Source: Anaeramoeba ignava BMAN
Lineage: Eukaryota; Protista; Anaeramoebae
Length of the DNA stretch: 64,000 nt
Direction: 5' to 3'
Assembly (NCBI GenBank): GCA_028826165.1
Contig: JAPDFW010000022.1
Coordinates: 690,758-754,757 of the forward strand
Part shown: positions 5,547 to 13,713 of the stretch, piece by piece
Position numbering within the stretch: position 1 is the stretch's first letter
How the letters are laid out: every line of letters starts with the position of its first letter
Program-made: the position numbers and the translations under genes
Notes under the pieces: generated by a model
Told to the model about the DNA's origin: nothing
Database searches by the model: none
What the model saw: only the letters and a program-made list of their open reading frames with translations

Positions 5547-7637
5547 TTAATTATTTGATATTTCTTTAATTTTATTAATTTTTTTTCTAATTTCATTATC
5601 AATTTCTTCAAGTTTTTTTTTTTTAATTTCATATTCTGCTTTAACTTTTTCATATTTCGGAGCAAACATTCTCTTTTTAAAATTAAAAAAATTAAAAAAT
5701 TAAAAATTAAAAAAATTATATTATTTTAATAAAAAAATACTTTGAGATATGGATTTGGTATTGAACCAATTTTTTTTTGAATTTCTTCAAGATCTTTTTC
5801 TAAAGTTTGAATTTCTTGTTCGAGTGTTTGCTTTTCAAGAATAATTTGTTCATCAATTTCTATAAGAAGAAAATTAAAAAAAAAAAATAAGGAATAAAAA
5901 GATAAAAATTTGTTTTGTTTTTGGAATATTATTTACCTGCTTCAATTTCCATTGCAGTTTCTTCTTGAATTTCATTTTTAATTTCATTTTTAATTTGATT
6001 TTGAATTTGATTTTGAATTTGATTTTGATTTTGATTTTGAATTTCATTTTGAATTTGAATTTGATTTTGAATTTGATTTTGAATTTGATTTTGATTTTGA
6101 TTTTGAATTTGAATTTGATTTTGAATTTGGATTTGATTTTGAATTTCATTTTGATTTTGAATTTGATTTTGATTTTGATTTTGATTTTGAATTTCTTTTT
6201 GATTTTCATTTTGAATATTTTGATTTTGAATTTGATTTTGATTTTGATTTTGAATATTTTGATTTTGAATATTTTCAATTTGAATTTCTTTTTGAATTTG
6301 AATTTGAATTTGATTTTCATTTTGAATTTCTTTTTGAATTTGATTTTGAATTTGAATTTGATTTTGAATTTTAAGTGGAATTCGATTTTGATTTTGAATA
6401 TTTTGATTTTGAATATTTTGATTTTGAATATTTTCATTTTGAATATTTTGATTTTGATTTTCATTTTGAATTTGATTTTGAATATTTTGATTTTGAATAT
6501 TTTGAATTTGATTTTCATTTTGAATTTGATTTTCATTTTGAATTTGATTTTCATTTTGATTTTCATTTTGAATTTGAATTTGATTTTGAATATTTTGAAT
6601 TTGATTTTGATTTTGATTTTGAACAAGAGTTAAATTTTGGTTTCTTGGAATTGCAAGTTCTTTTTCTTCAAAATCGAAATCTAAAGGAGTTTAATAAAAA
6701 TAATTTAAATAATAAATTTAATAATAAATTTAATAATAAATATAATAATAAATTAAATAATAAATTAAATAATAAATATAATAATAAATTAAATAATAAA
6801 TTAAATAATAAATTAAATAATAAATTTAATAATAATTTTAATAATAAATTTAATAATAAATTTAATAATAAATTTAATAATAAATTTAATAATAAATTTA
6901 ATAATAAATTAAATAATAAATTAAATAATAAATTTAATAATAAATTAAATAATAAATTAAATAATAAATTAAATAATAAATATAATAATTAATTTAATAA
7001 TAAATTAAATAATAAATTAAATAATAAATTAAATAATAAATTAAATAATAAATTAAATAATAAATTTAATAATAAATTTAATAATAAATTTAATAATTAA
7101 TTTAATAATAAATTTAATAATTAATTTTAAATAAAACCAACTTTCAAAAGTATTTATGCCAGTTCTATTTTTATGTTTAAGTAATATAGATTCACCAAGA
7201 CCCAAATCATCTAAAGATAATTGATTAAGAGCATCAATCCTAGTTTGAGAGATATTTTTAGTAGGATAAGTGATACCACTATTAAGTTGGAATCTTGAAG
7301 GAGAACGAGGACGAAGAGAATGAGGAATTGTAGTCATATCACGTGATTTTTCAACTAAATTCTCTATTTCCTCACCTCTTGGTTCAACAATCGCTATTTG
7401 CGAAATGTCCCCGCTTTTAAACAATACATAATTTTCCCATGTTTTTTGTGATTCAATGAAAGTTGGTAAATCAAATATTATTCCTGGTTTTTCATATTCT
7501 CCCATTTTAAATACAAAATTTCGATCGTTTGCAAACATCATTCCTACATCTTCTAATTCATCATTTTCATTTCTAAGTCTTCTTCTTAATATTTCTGCTT
7601 GATTTTCTGGTAAACGTAAAATAAATTGTTCTTCCAT
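5547..7637 (-). CDS. TAF7: TFIID subunit 7 (TAF7/TAFII55) with an N/Q-rich insert, about 4 exons
   Basis: N-terminal MEEQFILRLP...DLPTFIESQKT...FKSGDISQI...SGITYP matches the TAFII55 N domain. Downstream exons give an NQ repeat, then a coiled coil ending NPYLK|RMFAPKY...SNN-stop. The first donor position is ambiguous. Confidence 0.85.
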
Positions 7638-7979: not shown

Positions 7980-10900
7980 ATGGAAAAGAAAATAGAAAAT
8001 AAAACAGATCCAAATGAAATGATATTAGAAACAAAATGGGTTTTTTGGTTTGATGAAGGTAAAAAAAAAAAGAAAAAAAAAAAAAAAAACGGAAAGAAAA
8101 AAAGAAAAAAAAAAAACGGAAATTTATTGAATAAATTTAAATTCAATTTTCAATTATAAATTGCAATAATTACAGGACAGCCAATTGGAACTGACTGTAA
8201 TAATTATCGTGAAAGTTTAGAAAAACTTGGAGAATGTGGATCTGTTCAAAGTTTCTGGGCATATCATTCCAAAATTAATGTGAATACTCTTCCAGATCGA
8301 ACAAAAGTTCTTTTTTTTCGTGAAGGAATTCAAGCTATTTGGGAAGATGATGCTAATAAAAATGGTGGGAAATTTGTCATAAAACAATTCCCTTTTGATG
8401 ACACCAATTCTATTTGGACTAATCTTTTGCTTGAATGTATTGGTGAACAATTTATTGATTCTGATCAAATTGTATTTTTACATTTGATTTAATTTTAATA
8501 TTAATTTAAATTTTCATTTTAATTTTAATTTTAATTTTAATTTTAATTTTATTAATAATTTTGATTTTGATTTTATAAATTAATTTTATTAATAATTTTG
8601 ATTTTGATTTTAATTTTAATTTTAATTTTAATTTTATAAATTAATTTTAATATTAATTTTAATTTTAATTTTAATTTTAATTTTAATTTTAATTTTAATT
8701 TTAATTTTAATATAAATTTTAATTTTAATTTTAATTTTAATTTTAATTTTAATTTTAATTTTAATTTTAATTTTAATTTTAATTTTAATTTTAATTTTAA
8801 TTTTAATTTTATTAATAATTTTAATATTAATTTTAATATTAATTTTAATTTTTAATATAAATTTAAATTTTAATTTTAATTTTAATTTTAATTTTAATTT
8901 TAATTTTAATTTTAATTTTAATTTTAATTTTAATTTTAATTTTAATTTTAATTTTAATTTTAATTTTAATTTTAATTTTTAATTTTAATTTTAATTTTAA
9001 TTTTAATTTTAATTTTAATTTTAATTTTCATTTTAATTTTATAAATGAATTTTAATTTTATTAATAATTTTGATTTTGATTTTATAATTTTAATTTTAAT
9101 TTTAATTTTAATTTTAATTTTAATTTTAATTTTGATTTTAAATTTAATATTAATTATAATTATAATTTTATTAATAATTTTAATTTTAATTTTAATTTTA
9201 ATTTTATAAATGAATTTTAATTTTAATTTTAATTTTAATTTTAATTTTAATTTAAATTTTAATTTTAATATTAATTTTAATTTTAATTTTAATTTAATTT
9301 TAAATTTAATATTAATATTAATTTTAATTTTAAACTTAAAAAAAAGTGTGGAGTTGTTTTATCTTTTCGTAAACAATCAAATATTATTTCTGTTTGGAAT
9401 CGTGACAAAACTAAAAATATTGATCAAACTATGAAAAGAATTCGAGATATAGTTGGAGAAAAACCAATTATAGAATACATACCACATGATATCAGAAAAG
9501 AAAATTTAATGATGATTATGCAAAAAGTTCCACAAATTCAAAGAAGACATTCATTAAATACAAGAACAGCAAATTTAATTTATGAAGATCTTCCTCAAAG
9601 AAAAAATCCTTCTTTAAATTCTCCACAAAATGGAAAAAATTTTAAAAAGAACAATCAAAAAAAAAATTCAAACCATAATAATTTTTTTAACCAAAAAACA
9701 AAAAGCAAAAGTAGTAATAATATTCATCAAAATTTTTTAGATGACAAAAAAAGAAACAATTTTAATCAGTTAAATAGAAATAACAATAACAATAACAATA
9801 ACAATAATAAATCTCCAAAAAAAAATAATGAGAATAAAAATCCATCTTCAATTAACTTAAATCCAAATTCAAACAAAAAGAAAAAAAAAAGAAATAAAAA
9901 AAAGAAAAATCAAAATCAAAATCAAAATCAAAATCAAAATCAAAATCAAAATCAAAATCAAAATCAAAATGAAACTAAAAATGAAACTAAAAATGAAACT
10001 GAAAATGAAAATGAAACTAAAAATGAAACTAAAAATGAAACTAAAAATGAAACTAAAAATGAAACTAAAAATGAAACTGAAAATCAGATTAAAAATGAAA
10101 ATCAAAATGAAACTAAAAATGAAATTAAAAATGAAATTAAAAATGAAATTAAAAATGAAACTAAAAATGAAACTAAAAATGAAATTAAAAATGAAACTAA
10201 AAATGAAAATCAAAATGAAATTAAAAATGAAACTAAAAATGAAATTAAAAATGAAATTAAAAATCAAAATAACAATCAAAATAACAATCCAAATTCAAAC
10301 AATCGAAATCAAAATTCAAACAAAAAGAAAAAGAAAAGAAATAACAAAAAGAAAAAGAAATACCGAAATTCAAATTTAAATAAAAACAAAATTCAAAACA
10401 AAAATAAAATCGAGATTAAAAATGAAATTGAAAATGAAACTAAAAATGAAATTAAAAATGAAATTAAAAATGAAATTAAAATTGAAAATGAAATTAAAAA
10501 TGAAATTAAAAATGAAATTAAAAATGAAACTAAAAATGAAACTAAAAACAAAAATGAAACTAAAAATGAAAATGAAACTAAAAATGAAAATGAAAATGAA
10601 ATTCAAAACAAAAATGAAATTAAAAATGAAACTAAAATTAAAAATGAAATTGAAATTGAAATTGAAAATGAAACTAAAAATGAAAATGAAAATGAAATTG
10701 AAAATGAAACTAAAAATGAAAATGAAATTGAAAATGAAACTAAAAATGAAACAAATGAAAATGAAACTAAAAATGAAATTAAAAATGAAACTAAAAATGA
10801 AAATGAAACTAAAAATCAAATTAAAAATGAAACTAAAAATGAAAATGAATCTAAAAATGAAATTAAAAATGAAACTAAAAACAAAAATGAAACTAAAAAT

Positions 10901-11517
10901 GAAACTAAAAATGAAACTAAAAATCAAATTAAAAATGAAATTCAAAACAAAAATGAAACTAAAAATGAAACTAAAAATGAAACTAAAAATGAAATTGAAA
11001 TTGAAAATGAAAATCTAAATCAAAAACTAAAAATGAAATTCAAAATGAAATTCAAAATCAAAATGAAAATGAAACTAAAAATCAAAATCAAAATCAAAAT
11101 CAAATTCAAAATCAAAATCAAAATCAAATTCAAAATCAAAATCAAAATCAAAATCAAATCCAAATTCAAAAAGATACAACTGAAATTAATCAAAATTCAT
11201 TAAAAAGTAAATCTACAAGTTTTATTAATAATTTAGAAAAACAAAAATCACAAGATGACATTAAACAAACCAAATTCAGAAAGAAAAAGATGAAAAAATC
11301 AAGTTCAAAACCAGAAAAAATTCGATCTTTTTCAGAAAAACAAAATTTTGATAAAAATCAAAACAAAAGAAACAGAAACAAAAACAAAAACAAAAACAAA
11401 AACAGAAACAGAACTAAAACCAATAAAGATATTGCTTTAATTTCTAAAATTGGAATAGGAATTGCTTTAATTGCATTTTTATTATTGATTTCAATGTTCG
11501 TTTCTATTCATCTTTAA
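7980..11517 (+). CDS. eIF4E-family cap-binding protein with a long N/E/K/T repeat stalk and a predicted C-terminal transmembrane helix (1-nt frameshift near 11021-11027)
   Basis: KWVFWFD, VQSFW, FREGIQAIWEDDANKNGGKF, WTNLLLECIGEQF and CGVVLSFR...ISVWN are eIF4E hallmarks. Introns near 8059-8176 and at 8472-9346. After the frameshift the reading continues to IGIGIALIAFLLLISMFVSIHL-stop. Confidence 0.85.
9908..11160 (+). repeat. Coding minisatellite, AAAAATGAAA(C/T)T 12-mers (KNET/KNEI) flanked by (CAAAAT)n NQ runs
   Basis: Directly visible tandem units inside the eIF4E ORF. Confidence 0.9.
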
Positions 11518-11828
11518 CAAATAACTTTTAAGCGAAAAAAGAGAAAATTATCTTTCAAATTTTTTAAACGTTTTTTTTTTGTTGATAAAAAAAAATTCTT
11601 GAGAAAATTTAATTCTTTTTTTCAAGATTCTTTCTTTTCTTTTCTTTTCTTTCTTTCTTTCTTTCTTTTTTTCTTTTCAAAAAGAGGAAAAATAAAAATT
11701 CTTCTTTTTCTTTTCAAGATTAAAAATTTTTTAATTTCATTTTTTTTTAATTTCATTTTTTTCTTTTTGTTATTTTTATTTTTATTTCCTTTTCTCTTTT
11801 TTTTTTTTTTTTTTGGTTTACTTTTAAA

Positions 11829-13713
11829 ATGGGATCTTCTCTTAAAAAACTTTTTAAAAAAAAACAAACTTCATTATTAATGGTAGGTCTTGATTCAGCA
11901 GGAAAAACAACAGTTTTAAATTGGTTAAAATCAGGTGTTAAAACAGATACAGAACCAACTATTGGTATTTATTCTCAATTTTTGAATAAAAATAAAATTC
12001 ATTTATAAAATTAAAATTAAAATTAAAATTAAAATTCATTTATAAAATTATAATTATAGTTTAAAATTAATATTAAAATTATAATCAAAATTCATTTATA
12101 TAATTAAAATTAAAATTAAAATTAATATTAAAATTAAATTTAAAAATTAAAATTAAAATTAAAATTAATATTAAAATTAAATTTAAAAATTAAAATTAAA
12201 ATTAATATTAATATTTAAATTAAAATTAAAATTAAAATTTAAATTAATATTAAAATTCATTTATAAAATTCATTTATAAAATTAATATTAAAATTCATTT
12301 ATAAAATTAAAATTAATATTAAAATTAAAATTAAAATTAAATATTAAAATTAATATTTAAAATTAATATTAAAATTAAAATTAAAATTAAAATTAATATT
12401 AAAATTAATATTAAAATTCATTTATAAAAATTAAAATTAATATTAAAATTATAATCAAAATTCATTTATAAAATTAAAATTAAAATTAAAAATTCATTTA
12501 TAAAATTAAAATTAAAATTAATATTTAAATTAAAATTAAAAATTAAAATTTATATTAAAATTCATTTATAAAATTAAAATTAAAATTAATATTAAAATTC
12601 ATTTATAAAATTAAAATCAAAATTAATATTCATTTATAAAATTCATTTATAAAATTAAAATTAAAATTAAAATTAAAATTAAAATTAAAATTAAAATTAA
12701 AATTAAAAATTAAAATTAAAATTAAAATTAAAATTAAAATTAAAATTAAAATTAAAATTAAAATTAATATTAAAATTCATTTATAAAATTAAAATTAATA
12801 TTAAAATTAATATTAAAATTAAAATTAAAATTAAAATTAAAAATTAAAATTAAAATTAATATTGAAATTAAATTTAAAATTCATTTATAAAATTATAATT
12901 AAAAATTTAAATTAAAATTAAAATTAAAATTTAAATTAATATTAAAATTCATTTATAAAATTCATTTATAAAATTAATATTAAAATTCATTTATAAAATT
13001 AAAATTAATATTAAAATTAAAATTAAAATTAAATATTAAAATTAATATTAAAATTAAAATTAAAATTAAAATTAAAATTAAAATTAAAATTAAAATTAAA
13101 ATTAAAATTAAAATTAAAATTAAAATTAAAATTAAAATTAAAATTAAAATTAAAATTAAAATTAAAATTAATATTAAAATTCAAATTAAAATTTAAAATT
13201 AAAATTATAATTAAAATTCATTTATAAAATTAATATTAAAATTCATTTATAAAATTCATTTATAAAATTAAAATTAAAATCAAAATGAAAATTAAAATTA
13301 AATTTAAAGGTTTTAGTGTTGAAACAATAAAATATCATAAATTAACACTTCGAGTGTGGGATATGGGAGGACAAGATAAAATCCGACCATTATGGGCACA
13401 CTATTACAAATCAGCAAAAGGAATAATATTCGTAATTGCAAGCGATGAACCACAAAGATTTGAAGAAGCAAATCTTGAGCTTCAAAAGATGTTAAATAAT
13501 GAAGATTTAGGTCCAGTTCCTCTTCTTGTTTTTGCAAATAAACAAGACTTACCTAAAGCAGAAAGTACTGATGCTATCTCACGTAAATTAAATCTTGGAT
13601 CATTGAATAATAGAGAGTGGTTCATACAAAAAACTTCAGCTATTTCCGGTGATGGTATTTATGAAGGTCTAAGTTGGCTCTCAAATCTCCTCTCAAAAAA
13701 GAATGAAAAATAA
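11829..13713 (+). CDS. Arf-family small GTPase, 2 exons
   Basis: MGSS N-terminus (Gly2 myristoylation site), [13 protein letters not shown]|[23 protein letters not shown] and TSA motifs. Intron 11965-13309 is filled with (AAAATT)n. Confidence 0.93.

What the first reader, a model, noticed from the sequence alone, without database searches (positions are those of the whole stretch)
7980..11517. eIF4E-family protein apparently tethered to a membrane by a long stalk and a C-terminal tail anchor
Seen: a complete eIF4E domain with W102-E103 equivalents intact (WED), Tyr at the W56 position, and the dorsal VEDFW motif changed to VQSFW. It is followed by roughly 600 aa of N/K/E/T-rich repeats with basic patches. 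Across one apparent 1-nt slip (caaaaac, 11021-11027) it continues to a basic stretch and a terminal hydrophobic helix IGIGIALIAFLLLISMFVSIHL-stop. Known: characterised eIF4Es are soluble, and a single C-terminal helix after basic residues is the tail-anchor signature. Inference: a membrane-bound cap-binding protein that could dock, translate or silence mRNAs at the ER, hydrogenosome or another organelle surface. I know of no described example, but could not search.
Basis: partly seen in the sequence, partly recalled or inferred. Interest (0 to 1): 0.8.

Follow-up and report, generated by a model that had tools for sequence, protein, structure and literature searches.

The report
Membrane-anchored mRNA cap-binding protein (eIF4E)
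This amoeba gene pairs an mRNA cap-binding domain with a long floppy linker and, across a one-base frame break I could not check, a membrane anchor; that same layout occurs in many protists but is absent from the eIF4E surveys I read, so it may be an overlooked way to hold mRNAs at membranes.

Summary
Three exons (7980-8058, 8176-8471, 9347 onward) tile a complete eIF4E domain that is closest to 4EHP (eIF4E2): Tyr at the W56 position, WED intact, Ile at the K162 position.

Exon 3 continues through about 120 unique residues and about 430 residues of N/E/T/K repeats. The codon phase of the repeat holds over 71 consecutive copies, then shifts once between 11006 and 11032. From there a second frame runs open to a 20-residue hydrophobic helix (11449-11508), two more residues and a stop.

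The decisive new result comes from relatives. Seven of the nine best matches to the domain among 1.84 billion proteins have the same build: N-terminal eIF4E domain, 130-760 residue disordered linker, one C-terminal helix. I counted 32 such proteins, from Thecamoeba, Sappinia, Stygamoeba, Protostelium, Cavostelium, Acytostelium, Naegleria and unnamed environmental eukaryotes. Several are complete transcript ORFs.

Four eIF4E classification papers and reviews never use the word transmembrane.

Not settled:
- The 1-nt offset could not be checked, because reads did not cover it. It is probably a Nanopore homopolymer error.
- The domain sequence places this protein only weakly inside the anchored clade.
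- Cap binding and the target membrane are inferred, not tested.

Tail-anchored eIF4E here: about 0.75. New variant of a known kind.

The parts
7980..8058 (+). Exon 1: start codon and the first strand of the eIF4E core (W43 and W46 equivalents, both Trp). The last base is the first base of a split Gly codon.
   Evidence: Aligns with the LExxWxFWYDE block of homologues. The donor GT is at 8059. There is no hydrophobic N-terminal segment: maximum KD is -0.63.
8059..8175 (+). Intron 1, 117 nt, GT..AG, A-rich.
   Evidence: Sequence. It must be removed for exon 1 and exon 2 to match the spacing seen in homologues. It contains an in-frame TAA at 8157-8159.
8176..8471 (+). Exon 2: the main body of the eIF4E domain, holding Tyr at the W56 position, VQSFW, WED and the GGK loop.
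   Evidence: Pfam IF4E 7.9e-24. The best solved relative is 4EHP/eIF4E2 at 8e-17, against eIF4E1 at about 3e-10.
8472..9346 (+). Intron 2, 875 nt, almost entirely a (TTTAAT)n microsatellite. Phase 0, between the ...DQI and CGVV... codons.
   Evidence: TRF finds 140 copies. There are stops in all frames and 8 phase changes. A metagenomic homologue has an intron at the same position (L020).
9347..9508 (+). Start of exon 3: the last third of the eIF4E domain (R157 and W166 equivalents present, Ile at the K162 position).
   Evidence: Pfam IF4E positions 111-149, 8.5e-6. Alignment A1.
9509..9870 (+). Unique, low-complexity basic linker, including an RRHS basophilic-kinase-type site.
   Evidence: Open frame with P = 0.0012 by simulation. 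R[RK]x(1-2)S sites recur in the linkers of all family members examined.
9871..11158 (+). 12-nt tandem repeat array encoding N/E/T/K (then N/Q) repeats. This is the disordered stalk.
   Evidence: TRF. Codon phase is kept in 71 of 71 motif copies up to 11006. The intronic repeat used as a control loses phase 8 times.
11011..11031 (+). The interval in which the reading frame must change by one base. The candidate is the A5 run at 11022-11026.
   Evidence: The last stop in the downstream frame is TGA at 11008-11010. Motif spacing from 11006 to 11032 is 26 nt instead of a multiple of 3. There is no GT dinucleotide between 9770 and 11206, so no intron can start here.
11201..11203 (+). TAA that ends the exon 3 frame as assembled, after 58 codons of off-frame repeat (K/M/F/I).
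11161..11448 (+). Unique basic, Ser-rich juxtamembrane segment in the second frame. It contains the ATG (11290) of the alternative 75-codon ORF.
   Evidence: The frame is open for 43 unique codons upstream of that ATG (P = 0.047) and for 118 unique codons overall (P = 0.00075).
11449..11508 (+). Predicted transmembrane helix, 20 residues.
   Evidence: The best 19-residue window has mean KD 2.66, and it is the only hydrophobic segment in the gene. One independent short-read contig matches 11427-11580 with no differences.
11509..11517 (+). Two residues after the helix (His-Leu), then the TAA stop.

Best explanation
One gene (7980-11517, + strand, three exons) encodes a tail-anchored, 4EHP-like member of the eIF4E family of about 848 residues.

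Layout:
- An N-terminal cap-binding domain faces the cytosol.
- An intrinsically disordered, highly charged stalk of about 650 residues follows.
- A single C-terminal transmembrane helix ends the protein, with only two residues after it. Such a helix can only be inserted post-translationally, as in tail-anchored proteins.

The one-base frame offset at about 11022-11026 is most likely an under-called A-run left in a Nanopore assembly, in a place where short-read polishing cannot work because it lies inside a tandem repeat.

The protein belongs to, or sits next to, a widespread family of protist eIF4Es with the same build that the eIF4E surveys I read do not mention.

Inferred mechanism: the anchored domain captures m7G-capped mRNAs within reach of a membrane surface, with the ER as the default guess given the very hydrophobic helix. 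Through the conserved dorsal Trp it would recruit a partner carrying a 4E-binding motif. Because the pocket is class II-like (Tyr at W56, Ile at K162), competition or repression, or simple mRNA tethering, is more likely than eIF4G-driven initiation. Recurrent RRxS sites in the linkers suggest control by kinases.

Shown here: the domain, the exon structure, phase conservation in the repeat, the helix, and the conserved architecture in relatives.

Inferred only: frame continuity, membrane insertion, cap binding, which membrane, and whether translation is promoted or repressed.
For: Domain and exon model.

Coding nature of the stalk:
- The frame is open for 618 codons.
- 71 of 71 repeat motifs sit in one phase, with spacings of 6, 9, 12, 18, 24 and 171 nt, all multiples of 3.
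- The intronic repeat of the same gene changes phase 8 times in 90 copies.

A single phase change at 11006-11032 leads into a frame that continues the same N/E/Q codon pattern, then 118 unique open codons (P = 0.00075), then the helix.

Architecture in relatives:
- 18 of the 150 best hits carry one C-terminal helix, and they are concentrated at the top of the list (10 of 26 against 8 of 124, P = 8e-5).
- Counting the further searches, I found 32 such proteins. Twenty-six have 14 or fewer residues after the helix. None has an N-terminal hydrophobic segment apart from one borderline case, P0162.
- Named sources are Thecamoeba, Sappinia, Stygamoeba, Protostelium, Cavostelium, Acytostelium and Naegleria. 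Several are complete Trinity or MMETSP transcript ORFs.

Placement:
- The window's nearest rows in the tree are anchored members.
- Holding the anchored proteins plus the window as one clade against 91 ordinary eIF4Es gives a better likelihood (+36.6) and is not rejected (p-AU 0.81).

AlphaFold model of homologue P0003: a confident eIF4E fold (TM-score 0.88 to Drosophila eIF4E, 0.87 to 4EHP), residues 182-315 disordered, residues 320-352 a confident helix.

Assembly method, if the genome is Anaeramoeba ignava: Nanopore R9 reads, ABruijn assembly, Pilon polishing (PMC11550330).
Against: - As assembled, the two parts are in different frames, and no read or transcript evidence bridges them. The only contig that could be laid covers 11427-11580.
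- The domain is not a clear member of the anchored clade by profile. Exon 2 scores 96.4 bits on the anchored-family model and 98.9 on the ordinary-eIF4E model. True members differ by +9 to +38 bits. Exons 1 and 3 lean only +7.4 and +3.9 bits. The family signature FWRYWNN / NLRLFK is degraded here.
- The frame upstream of the internal ATG at 11290 is only weakly non-random in its unique part (P = 0.047).
- No significant sequence similarity links this tail or linker to those of relatives beyond composition.
- No close orthologue, such as one from A. flamelloides, was identified.
Confidence: 0.75

Rival explanations
1. Two genes. One is a soluble eIF4E with a long repeat tail that really ends at 11203. 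The other is an independent 75-residue tail-anchored mini-protein translated from the ATG at 11290.
For: This is exactly what the assembly reads. An ATG exists at 11290. The unique open stretch upstream of it is only marginally non-random (P = 0.047). Other ends of the form basic run plus hydrophobic stretch occur elsewhere in the genome.
Against: - The last 58 codons before 11203 are the off-frame reading of the same repeat, while the repeat's normal codon phase continues in the frame of the helix.
- Only 86 nt separate the stop from the ATG.
- The nearest relatives of the domain all carry a C-terminal helix.
- The other genomic matches to the tail are low-complexity chance hits.
Confidence: 0.1
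2. The frameshift is real in this strain. The ancestral tail-anchored eIF4E has recently lost its anchor and is now a truncated soluble protein or a decaying gene.
For: The frames differ as assembled. The domain is unusually diverged from the anchored family.
Against: The downstream frame is still intact for 168 codons including the helix, and the cap-binding residues are intact. The break lies in an A-run inside a tandem repeat, the typical place for a residual Nanopore error (inference from the assembly method in PMC11550330). Other first-stage notes report apparent frameshifts in conserved genes of this assembly (unchecked).
Confidence: 0.08
3. The whole repeat array is a large repeat-filled intron like intron 2, with donor GT at 9711 and acceptor AG at 11172-11173. 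Splicing would join the two frames without any error and give a 360-residue tail-anchored eIF4E.
For: This GT..AG pair restores the frame exactly, giving 360 codons. The acceptor context, an A-run followed by AG, resembles that of intron 2. Intron 2 shows that repeat-filled introns close to 900 nt exist here. Relatives can be as short as 337-353 residues.
Against: - The supposed intron keeps one open frame for about 1,490 nt, including its unique non-repeat parts.
- It holds perfect codon phase over 71 repeat copies, unlike the genuine intronic repeat.
- The donor GTAGTA matches neither of the two observed donors.
Confidence: 0.07

Closest known systems
4EHP / eIF4E2 (class II eIF4E; PDB 2jgb, 5nvk)
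   Same: It is the best solved relative of the domain: 8e-17 and 64.7 bits, against about 44 bits for eIF4E1. Shared features are Tyr at the W56 position, a hydrophobic residue at the K162 position, an identical WEDDANKNGGK loop and a conserved dorsal Trp (W73 equivalent).
   Different: 4EHP is a soluble protein of about 245 residues with Tyr at the W43 position. This protein keeps Trp there, adds a stalk of about 650 residues and, if the frames are joined, ends in a transmembrane helix.
Protist eIF4Es with a C-terminal helix, annotated only as hypothetical protein or translation initiation factor 4E. Examples: Acytostelium subglobosum XP_012756069.1; Naegleria lovaniensis C9374_011458; transcripts of Thecamoeba, Sappinia, Stygamoeba, Protostelium and Cavostelium.
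   Same: Same order of parts: short N-terminus, eIF4E domain with Tyr or Phe at W56, a disordered basic and Ser-rich linker of 130-760 residues with RRxS sites, and one hydrophobic helix at or near the C-terminus. They are the top sequence matches and the nearest tree neighbours.
   Different: The window's domain lacks much of the family signature (FWRYWNN, NLRLFK) and scores equally well on an ordinary-eIF4E profile. Its linker is an N/E/T/K repeat, in keeping with the AT-rich genome, not a Ser/Pro/Arg-rich one.
Fungal eIF4E classes with long extensions (F-Subclass IA and F-Class VI; Hernandez group, J Biol Chem 2024, PMC11791286)
   Same: F-Subclass IA has a W56-to-Tyr change, and both classes have C-terminal extensions of 160-850 residues.
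   Different: That paper reports no membrane segment: the words transmembrane, membrane and hydrophobic do not occur in it. I could not link any of my hits to a named fungus, so any relationship is untested.
Integral-membrane or anchored mRNA tethers of ER and mitochondria, such as p180/RRBP1, AEG-1/MTDH and AKAP1 (from my own knowledge, not tested here)
   Same: The concept is the same: a membrane-anchored protein whose cytosolic part binds mRNA and holds it at an organelle surface.
   Different: Those proteins bind the mRNA body through basic, KH or Tudor regions. None uses a cap-binding eIF4E fold.

Membership tests
eIF4E family (Pfam PF01652) | IF4E domain scoring above the curated threshold | tested here: met
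   Exon 2 alone scores 84.6 bits against a cut-off of 28.7. Exon 3 adds 26 bits for model positions 111-149.
eIF4E family (Pfam PF01652) | Cap-sandwich aromatic pair (W56 and W102 positions), E103 and W166 | tested here: met
   Tyr, Trp, Glu and Trp in alignments to 4EHP and to homologues. [quoted passage not shown]
eIF4E family (Pfam PF01652) | Binding of the m7G cap | not testable with these tools
   Needs m7GTP-resin pull-down or a fluorescence titration.
Class II eIF4E (4EHP) | W56 replaced by Tyr or Phe | tested here: met
   The Tyr aligns with the Tyr in the SQSYEQN stretch of human 4EHP, the class II substitution at the W56 position.
Class II eIF4E (4EHP) | W43 replaced by Tyr, Phe or Leu (the metazoan and plant definition, Joshi 2005) | tested here: not met
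   Exon 1 reads KWVFWF, so Trp is retained. This is also true of the anchored family.
Class II eIF4E (4EHP) | R/K162 replaced by Ile, Val or Leu (the revised definition in PMC11791286) | tested here: met
   Counting from the conserved Cys to the conserved Trp in exon 3 (17 residues, as I recall for human eIF4E1 C150-W166; the numbering is from memory) puts Ile at position 162. In alignment A1 the same block lines up with the 4EHP-type row P0014.
C-terminally anchored eIF4E clade (defined here from the hits) | eIF4E domain, disordered linker and a single C-terminal hydrophobic helix on one polypeptide | tested here: inconclusive
   All three parts are present in order on one strand. They are separated by a 1-nt frame offset that reads could not resolve.
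C-terminally anchored eIF4E clade (defined here from the hits) | Domain sequence closer to anchored members than to ordinary eIF4Es | tested here: inconclusive
   For: seven of the top nine phmmer hits are anchored, the nearest tree rows are anchored, and the one-clade tree is not rejected (p-AU 0.81). Against: profile score differences are only -2.5, +3.9 and +7.4 bits for exons 2, 3 and 1, where true members show +9 to +38 on the main block.
Tail-anchored membrane proteins | A single transmembrane segment close to the C-terminus, too close to emerge from the ribosome before termination | tested here: met
   A 20-residue segment whose best 19-residue window has mean KD 2.66, followed by 2 residues and a stop. 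This holds for the second frame as read.
Tail-anchored membrane proteins | No signal peptide and no other hydrophobic segment | tested here: met
   Maximum 19-residue KD is -0.63 in exon 1, 0.31 in exon 2 and 0.34 in exon 3.
Tail-anchored membrane proteins | Actual post-translational membrane insertion (GET/EMC or mitochondrial pathway) | not testable with these tools
   Needs fractionation, carbonate extraction or imaging with and without the helix.

The most novel reading that the evidence does not exclude
Tail-anchored, 4EHP-like eIF4Es form an old class of cap-binding proteins that the eIF4E surveys I read do not mention. They are present in Amoebozoa, Heterolobosea, Anaeramoeba and further uncultured eukaryotes. 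They would hold capped mRNAs on a long flexible leash at the ER or another organelle surface and so control local translation or repression, possibly switched by phosphorylation of RRxS sites in the leash.
Probability: 0.5. Interest if true: 0.85.

Novelty: new variant of a known kind. Interest (0 to 1): 0.74.

Why it matters
eIF4E is among the most studied translation factors, and every characterised member I know of is soluble. mRNA localisation to membranes is usually put down to nascent chains, RNA-binding proteins or ribosome receptors.

A conserved family in which the cap-binding fold itself is bolted to a membrane would add a direct route for spatial control of translation, acting at the 5' end of the mRNA. 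It would also extend the classification of eIF4E families.

The idea is directly testable in tractable relatives, namely dictyostelids and Naegleria. For this genome, the finding also flags a gene model that standard annotation would probably truncate or split.

Tried and rejected
Reads:
- The second call (10960-11600, four runs) laid a single 154-bp contig piece on 11427-11580. It gave nothing over the frame offset and no RNA evidence.
- The look-up of sequencing runs gave no clear RNA run of the organism.

Look-ups and searches that found nothing:
- Exact look-ups of the 75-residue and 590-residue ORFs found no record.
- A word search with the first 150 residues of exon 3, among proteins of 340-1080 residues, found nothing.
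- The third word search (P0004 domain) found only unnamed environmental relatives, so a link to the fungal long-extension classes could not be made.

Paralogues:
- Own-genome matches to the tail (C72, C60) are low-complexity chance hits, not paralogues.
- The gene has no close paralogue. The best is 41% identity over 50 residues on C71.

Linker and tail motifs:
- All-against-all BLAST of linkers and tails showed only compositional similarity.
- I do not rely on the motif-level resemblances: R-x-x-S-x-S-Q-N-F near the helix in P0003, P0005 and P0141, and SPF(I/L)xL in some linkers.
- The AlphaFold model of P0003 showed no linker motif docked on the domain.

Exons were searched, aligned and scored separately by reference, so no whole-protein search, fold or tree of the window's own protein was made.

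Full report
WHAT IS THERE

The window is very AT-rich (21.3% G+C). It lies in a 42.8-Mb, 147-contig eukaryotic assembly. Another agent's note names the organism as Anaeramoeba ignava. I did not verify this independently, but the base composition agrees with the 80.65% A+T published for that genome (PMC11550330).

The gene on the + strand has three exons:
- Exon 1, 7980-8058.
- Intron 1, 8059-8175, GT..AG.
- Exon 2, 8176-8471.
- Intron 2, 8472-9346. It consists almost entirely of about 140 copies of TTTAAT.
- Exon 3, from 9347.

Exon 2 alone passes Pfam IF4E at 7.9e-24, and the start of exon 3 matches the end of the model. Aligned as separate rows against homologues, the three exons tile the domain exactly, with no gap or overlap. 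That validates both splice sites. A metagenomic homologue has an intron at the same position as intron 2 (L020).

WHICH KIND OF eIF4E

- The best solved relative is human 4EHP/eIF4E2 (8e-17, 64.7 bits). eIF4E1 structures score about 44 bits.
- The W56 position is Tyr, WED (W102-E103) is intact, and the WEDDANKNGGK loop is identical to that of 4EHP.
- The R157 and W166 equivalents are present, and position 162 is Ile.
- These are class II features in the revised classification of PMC11791286. However, the W43 position keeps Trp, unlike animal and plant 4EHP.
- The dorsal Val and Trp (VQSFW) that contact 4E-binding motifs are kept.

THE STALK

Exon 3 stays open for 618 codons, to a TAA at 11201-11203. 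After the domain come about 120 unique low-complexity residues, including an RRHS site. Then a 12-nt tandem repeat spans 9871-11158 and encodes N/E/T/K and N/Q repeats.

Two of the three frames of such a repeat are open by construction, so openness alone proves little. I therefore tracked the phase of the AATGAAA motif. All 71 copies from 9968 to 11006 are in one codon phase, with spacings of 6, 9, 12, 18, 24 and 171 nt. The TTTAAT repeat in intron 2 of the same gene changes phase 8 times in 90 copies.

The unique segments are also significantly open: 103 codons after the domain, P = 0.0012. I conclude the stalk is coding.

THE FRAME OFFSET AND THE TAIL

Between 11006 and 11032 the motif spacing is 26 nt, and the motif moves into another frame.

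- In the old frame the text becomes the off-frame K/M/F/I reading of the repeat and stops at 11203.
- The new frame is open from 11011. It continues the N/E/Q pattern, then runs through 118 unique codons (P = 0.00075), a basic Ser-rich stretch, a 20-residue hydrophobic segment at 11449-11508 (its best 19-residue window has mean KD 2.66), two residues and a stop.
- It is the only hydrophobic segment in the gene, and there is no signal peptide. So if the two frames are one protein, it has tail-anchor geometry with the eIF4E domain on the cytosolic side.
- One extra A in the A5 run at 11022-11026 would rebuild a normal repeat unit and join the frames, giving about 848 codons.
- No GT exists between 9770 and 11206, so a local intron is excluded.

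Only a very large intron, with a donor at 9711 or 9769, could bridge the frames. The pair 9711/11172 does restore the frame exactly, giving 360 codons. But it would discard about 1,490 nt that keep perfect codon phase, so I rank it low.

READS

The repeat blocked the first call. In the second call only one DNA contig piece was laid, identical to the window over 11427-11580. Nothing covered the offset, and there was no RNA.

If the genome is A. ignava BMAN, it was assembled from Nanopore R9 reads and polished with Illumina reads. An A-run inside a tandem repeat is where such polishing fails. This is inference, not a result. Other first-stage notes list apparent frameshifts in conserved genes of the same assembly. 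I did not check them.

RELATIVES: THE MAIN NEW RESULT

A full HMMER search of 1.84 billion representative proteins with exon 2 found 1,525 hits. The best are not ordinary eIF4Es of 200-250 residues but long proteins of 353-1013 residues with the domain near the N-terminus.

- Reading them showed a long disordered basic, Ser-rich linker and a hydrophobic helix at the C-terminal end in seven of the top nine. One of the other two is a truncated transcript.
- Over all 150 hits, 18 carry such a helix. They make up 10 of the top 26 and 8 of the remaining 124 (Fisher P = 8e-5).
- Two further word searches raised the count to 32. Each has a single hydrophobic segment. Twenty-six have 14 or fewer residues after it. 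None has an N-terminal hydrophobic segment, apart from one borderline case, P0162.
- Named sources are Thecamoeba quadrilineata (two paralogues), Sappinia pedata, Stygamoeba regulata, Protostelium nocturnum, Cavostelium apophysatum, Acytostelium subglobosum (XP_012756069.1, annotated hypothetical protein), Naegleria fowleri and N. lovaniensis. There are also MMETSP transcripts and environmental contigs.
- Several are complete ORFs from transcriptomes, so in those organisms the fusion of domain and helix is transcript-supported.
- An AlphaFold model of the shortest member (P0003) shows a confident eIF4E fold (TM-score 0.88 to Drosophila eIF4E, 0.87 to 4EHP), a disordered stretch at 182-315, and a confident 33-residue terminal helix.

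DOES THE WINDOW'S PROTEIN BELONG TO THAT CLADE?

- On a 98-column tree, the helix label needs 6 changes, against 17.0 for shuffled labels (0 of 500 shuffles as low). The window's nearest rows are anchored members.
- Forcing the anchored proteins plus the window into one clade against 91 ordinary-length eIF4Es gives a higher likelihood than the free quick search (+36.6) and is not rejected (p-AU 0.81).
- Profile scoring is sobering. Exon 2 scores 96.4 bits on the anchored-family model and 98.9 on the ordinary model. Left-out true members differ by +9 to +38 bits, and ordinary ones by -39 to +5.5.
- Exons 3 and 1 lean towards the anchored family by only +3.9 and +7.4 bits.

So this is either a strongly diverged member or a neighbour with the same architecture. 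Strong divergence is plausible in a genome whose orthologues share only 37% identity with the sister species. The linker and tail share only composition with relatives.

HOW IT PROBABLY WORKS (INFERENCE)

The helix is inserted post-translationally, and the eIF4E domain stays in the cytosol on a leash of several hundred disordered residues. The intact cap pocket in this protein, and its near-invariance across the family (alignment A2), argue that cap binding is the selected function.

The class II-type pocket suggests moderate affinity and, by analogy with 4EHP, partner-dependent repression or tethering, with eIF4G-driven initiation less likely. The conserved dorsal Trp suggests that a partner with a 4E-binding motif docks there. 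R[RK]x(1-2)S sites recur in every linker examined and suggest kinase control.

Which membrane is unknown. The very hydrophobic helix with almost no C-terminal flank favours the ER. Many relatives have basic residues after the helix, which in other systems favours the mitochondrial outer membrane.

IS IT KNOWN?

- Full-text searches for eIF4E together with transmembrane or tail-anchored terms found nothing relevant.
- The classification papers and reviews I opened contain no occurrence of 'transmembrane': Joshi 2005; Jagus 2012; the 2020 review 'eIF4E and Interactors from Unicellular Eukaryotes' (PMC7139794); and the 2024 fungal survey. The same is true of the 2018 mRNA-metabolism survey, PMC5862402.
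- The fungal survey describes classes with C-terminal extensions of 160-850 residues, and W56-to-Tyr in its F-Subclass IA, but no membrane segment. I could not connect my hits to named fungi.
- The library lacks most subscription journals, so a prior description cannot be excluded.

VERDICT

- Observation: confirmed.
- Probability that this locus encodes an eIF4E ending in a membrane anchor, by either the repaired-frame or the spliced route: about 0.8. For the specific 848-codon model: about 0.75.
- Novelty: a new variant of a known kind. It is made more interesting, not less, by being a family and not a one-off.

Every search used the exons separately, by reference.

Noticed in passing
window 8472-9346: Intron 2 of the eIF4E gene is 875 nt of nearly pure (TTTAAT)n, about 140 copies. 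That is very long for an intron that carries no other sequence. It served as the internal non-coding control for repeat-phase drift.
   Followed up: partly
L020:440-560 (metagenome contig, ENA ERZ28593685); also P0043: Environmental homologues with the anchored-family signature have a phase-0 intron at exactly the same codon boundary as the window's intron 2, before the conserved CG(A/V)V. The intron is only 41 nt there, so its position looks old while its size varies 20-fold.
   Followed up: partly
P0004, P0007, P0016, P0178, P0179; L018:3001-6042: A tight group (76-83% identical in the domain) of 813-1056-residue anchored eIF4Es comes from unnamed GC-rich environmental eukaryotes. The one contig fetched (P0007, L018) carries its gene as a single open frame. 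These differ from the rest in having 37-65 residues after the helix. Their organism is unknown.
   Followed up: partly
P0003, P0005, P0006, P0004, P0007, P0016 linkers: A short acidic-flanked motif, SPF(I/L)x(L), recurs early in the linkers of several anchored eIF4Es. It has the form of an aromatic-x-x-aliphatic docking motif. It is not confidently structured in the AlphaFold model, and the window has no clear counterpart.
   Followed up: partly
window 7053-7637 (-) and 11829-12008 (+): The flanking genes are ordinary. A TAF7 (TAFII55_N, 4.4e-23) gene is transcribed divergently from the eIF4E gene. The first exon of an Arf-family GTPase (1.7e-11) lies 311 nt downstream of the tail's stop.
   Followed up: yes
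G000 contigs C1, C56, C64, C71, C97, C103, C104 (loci L002-L010): The genome holds at least seven further eIF4E-domain loci, all split by introns. None is close to this one: the best is 41% identity over 50 residues on C71. Their classes were not worked out.
   Followed up: partly
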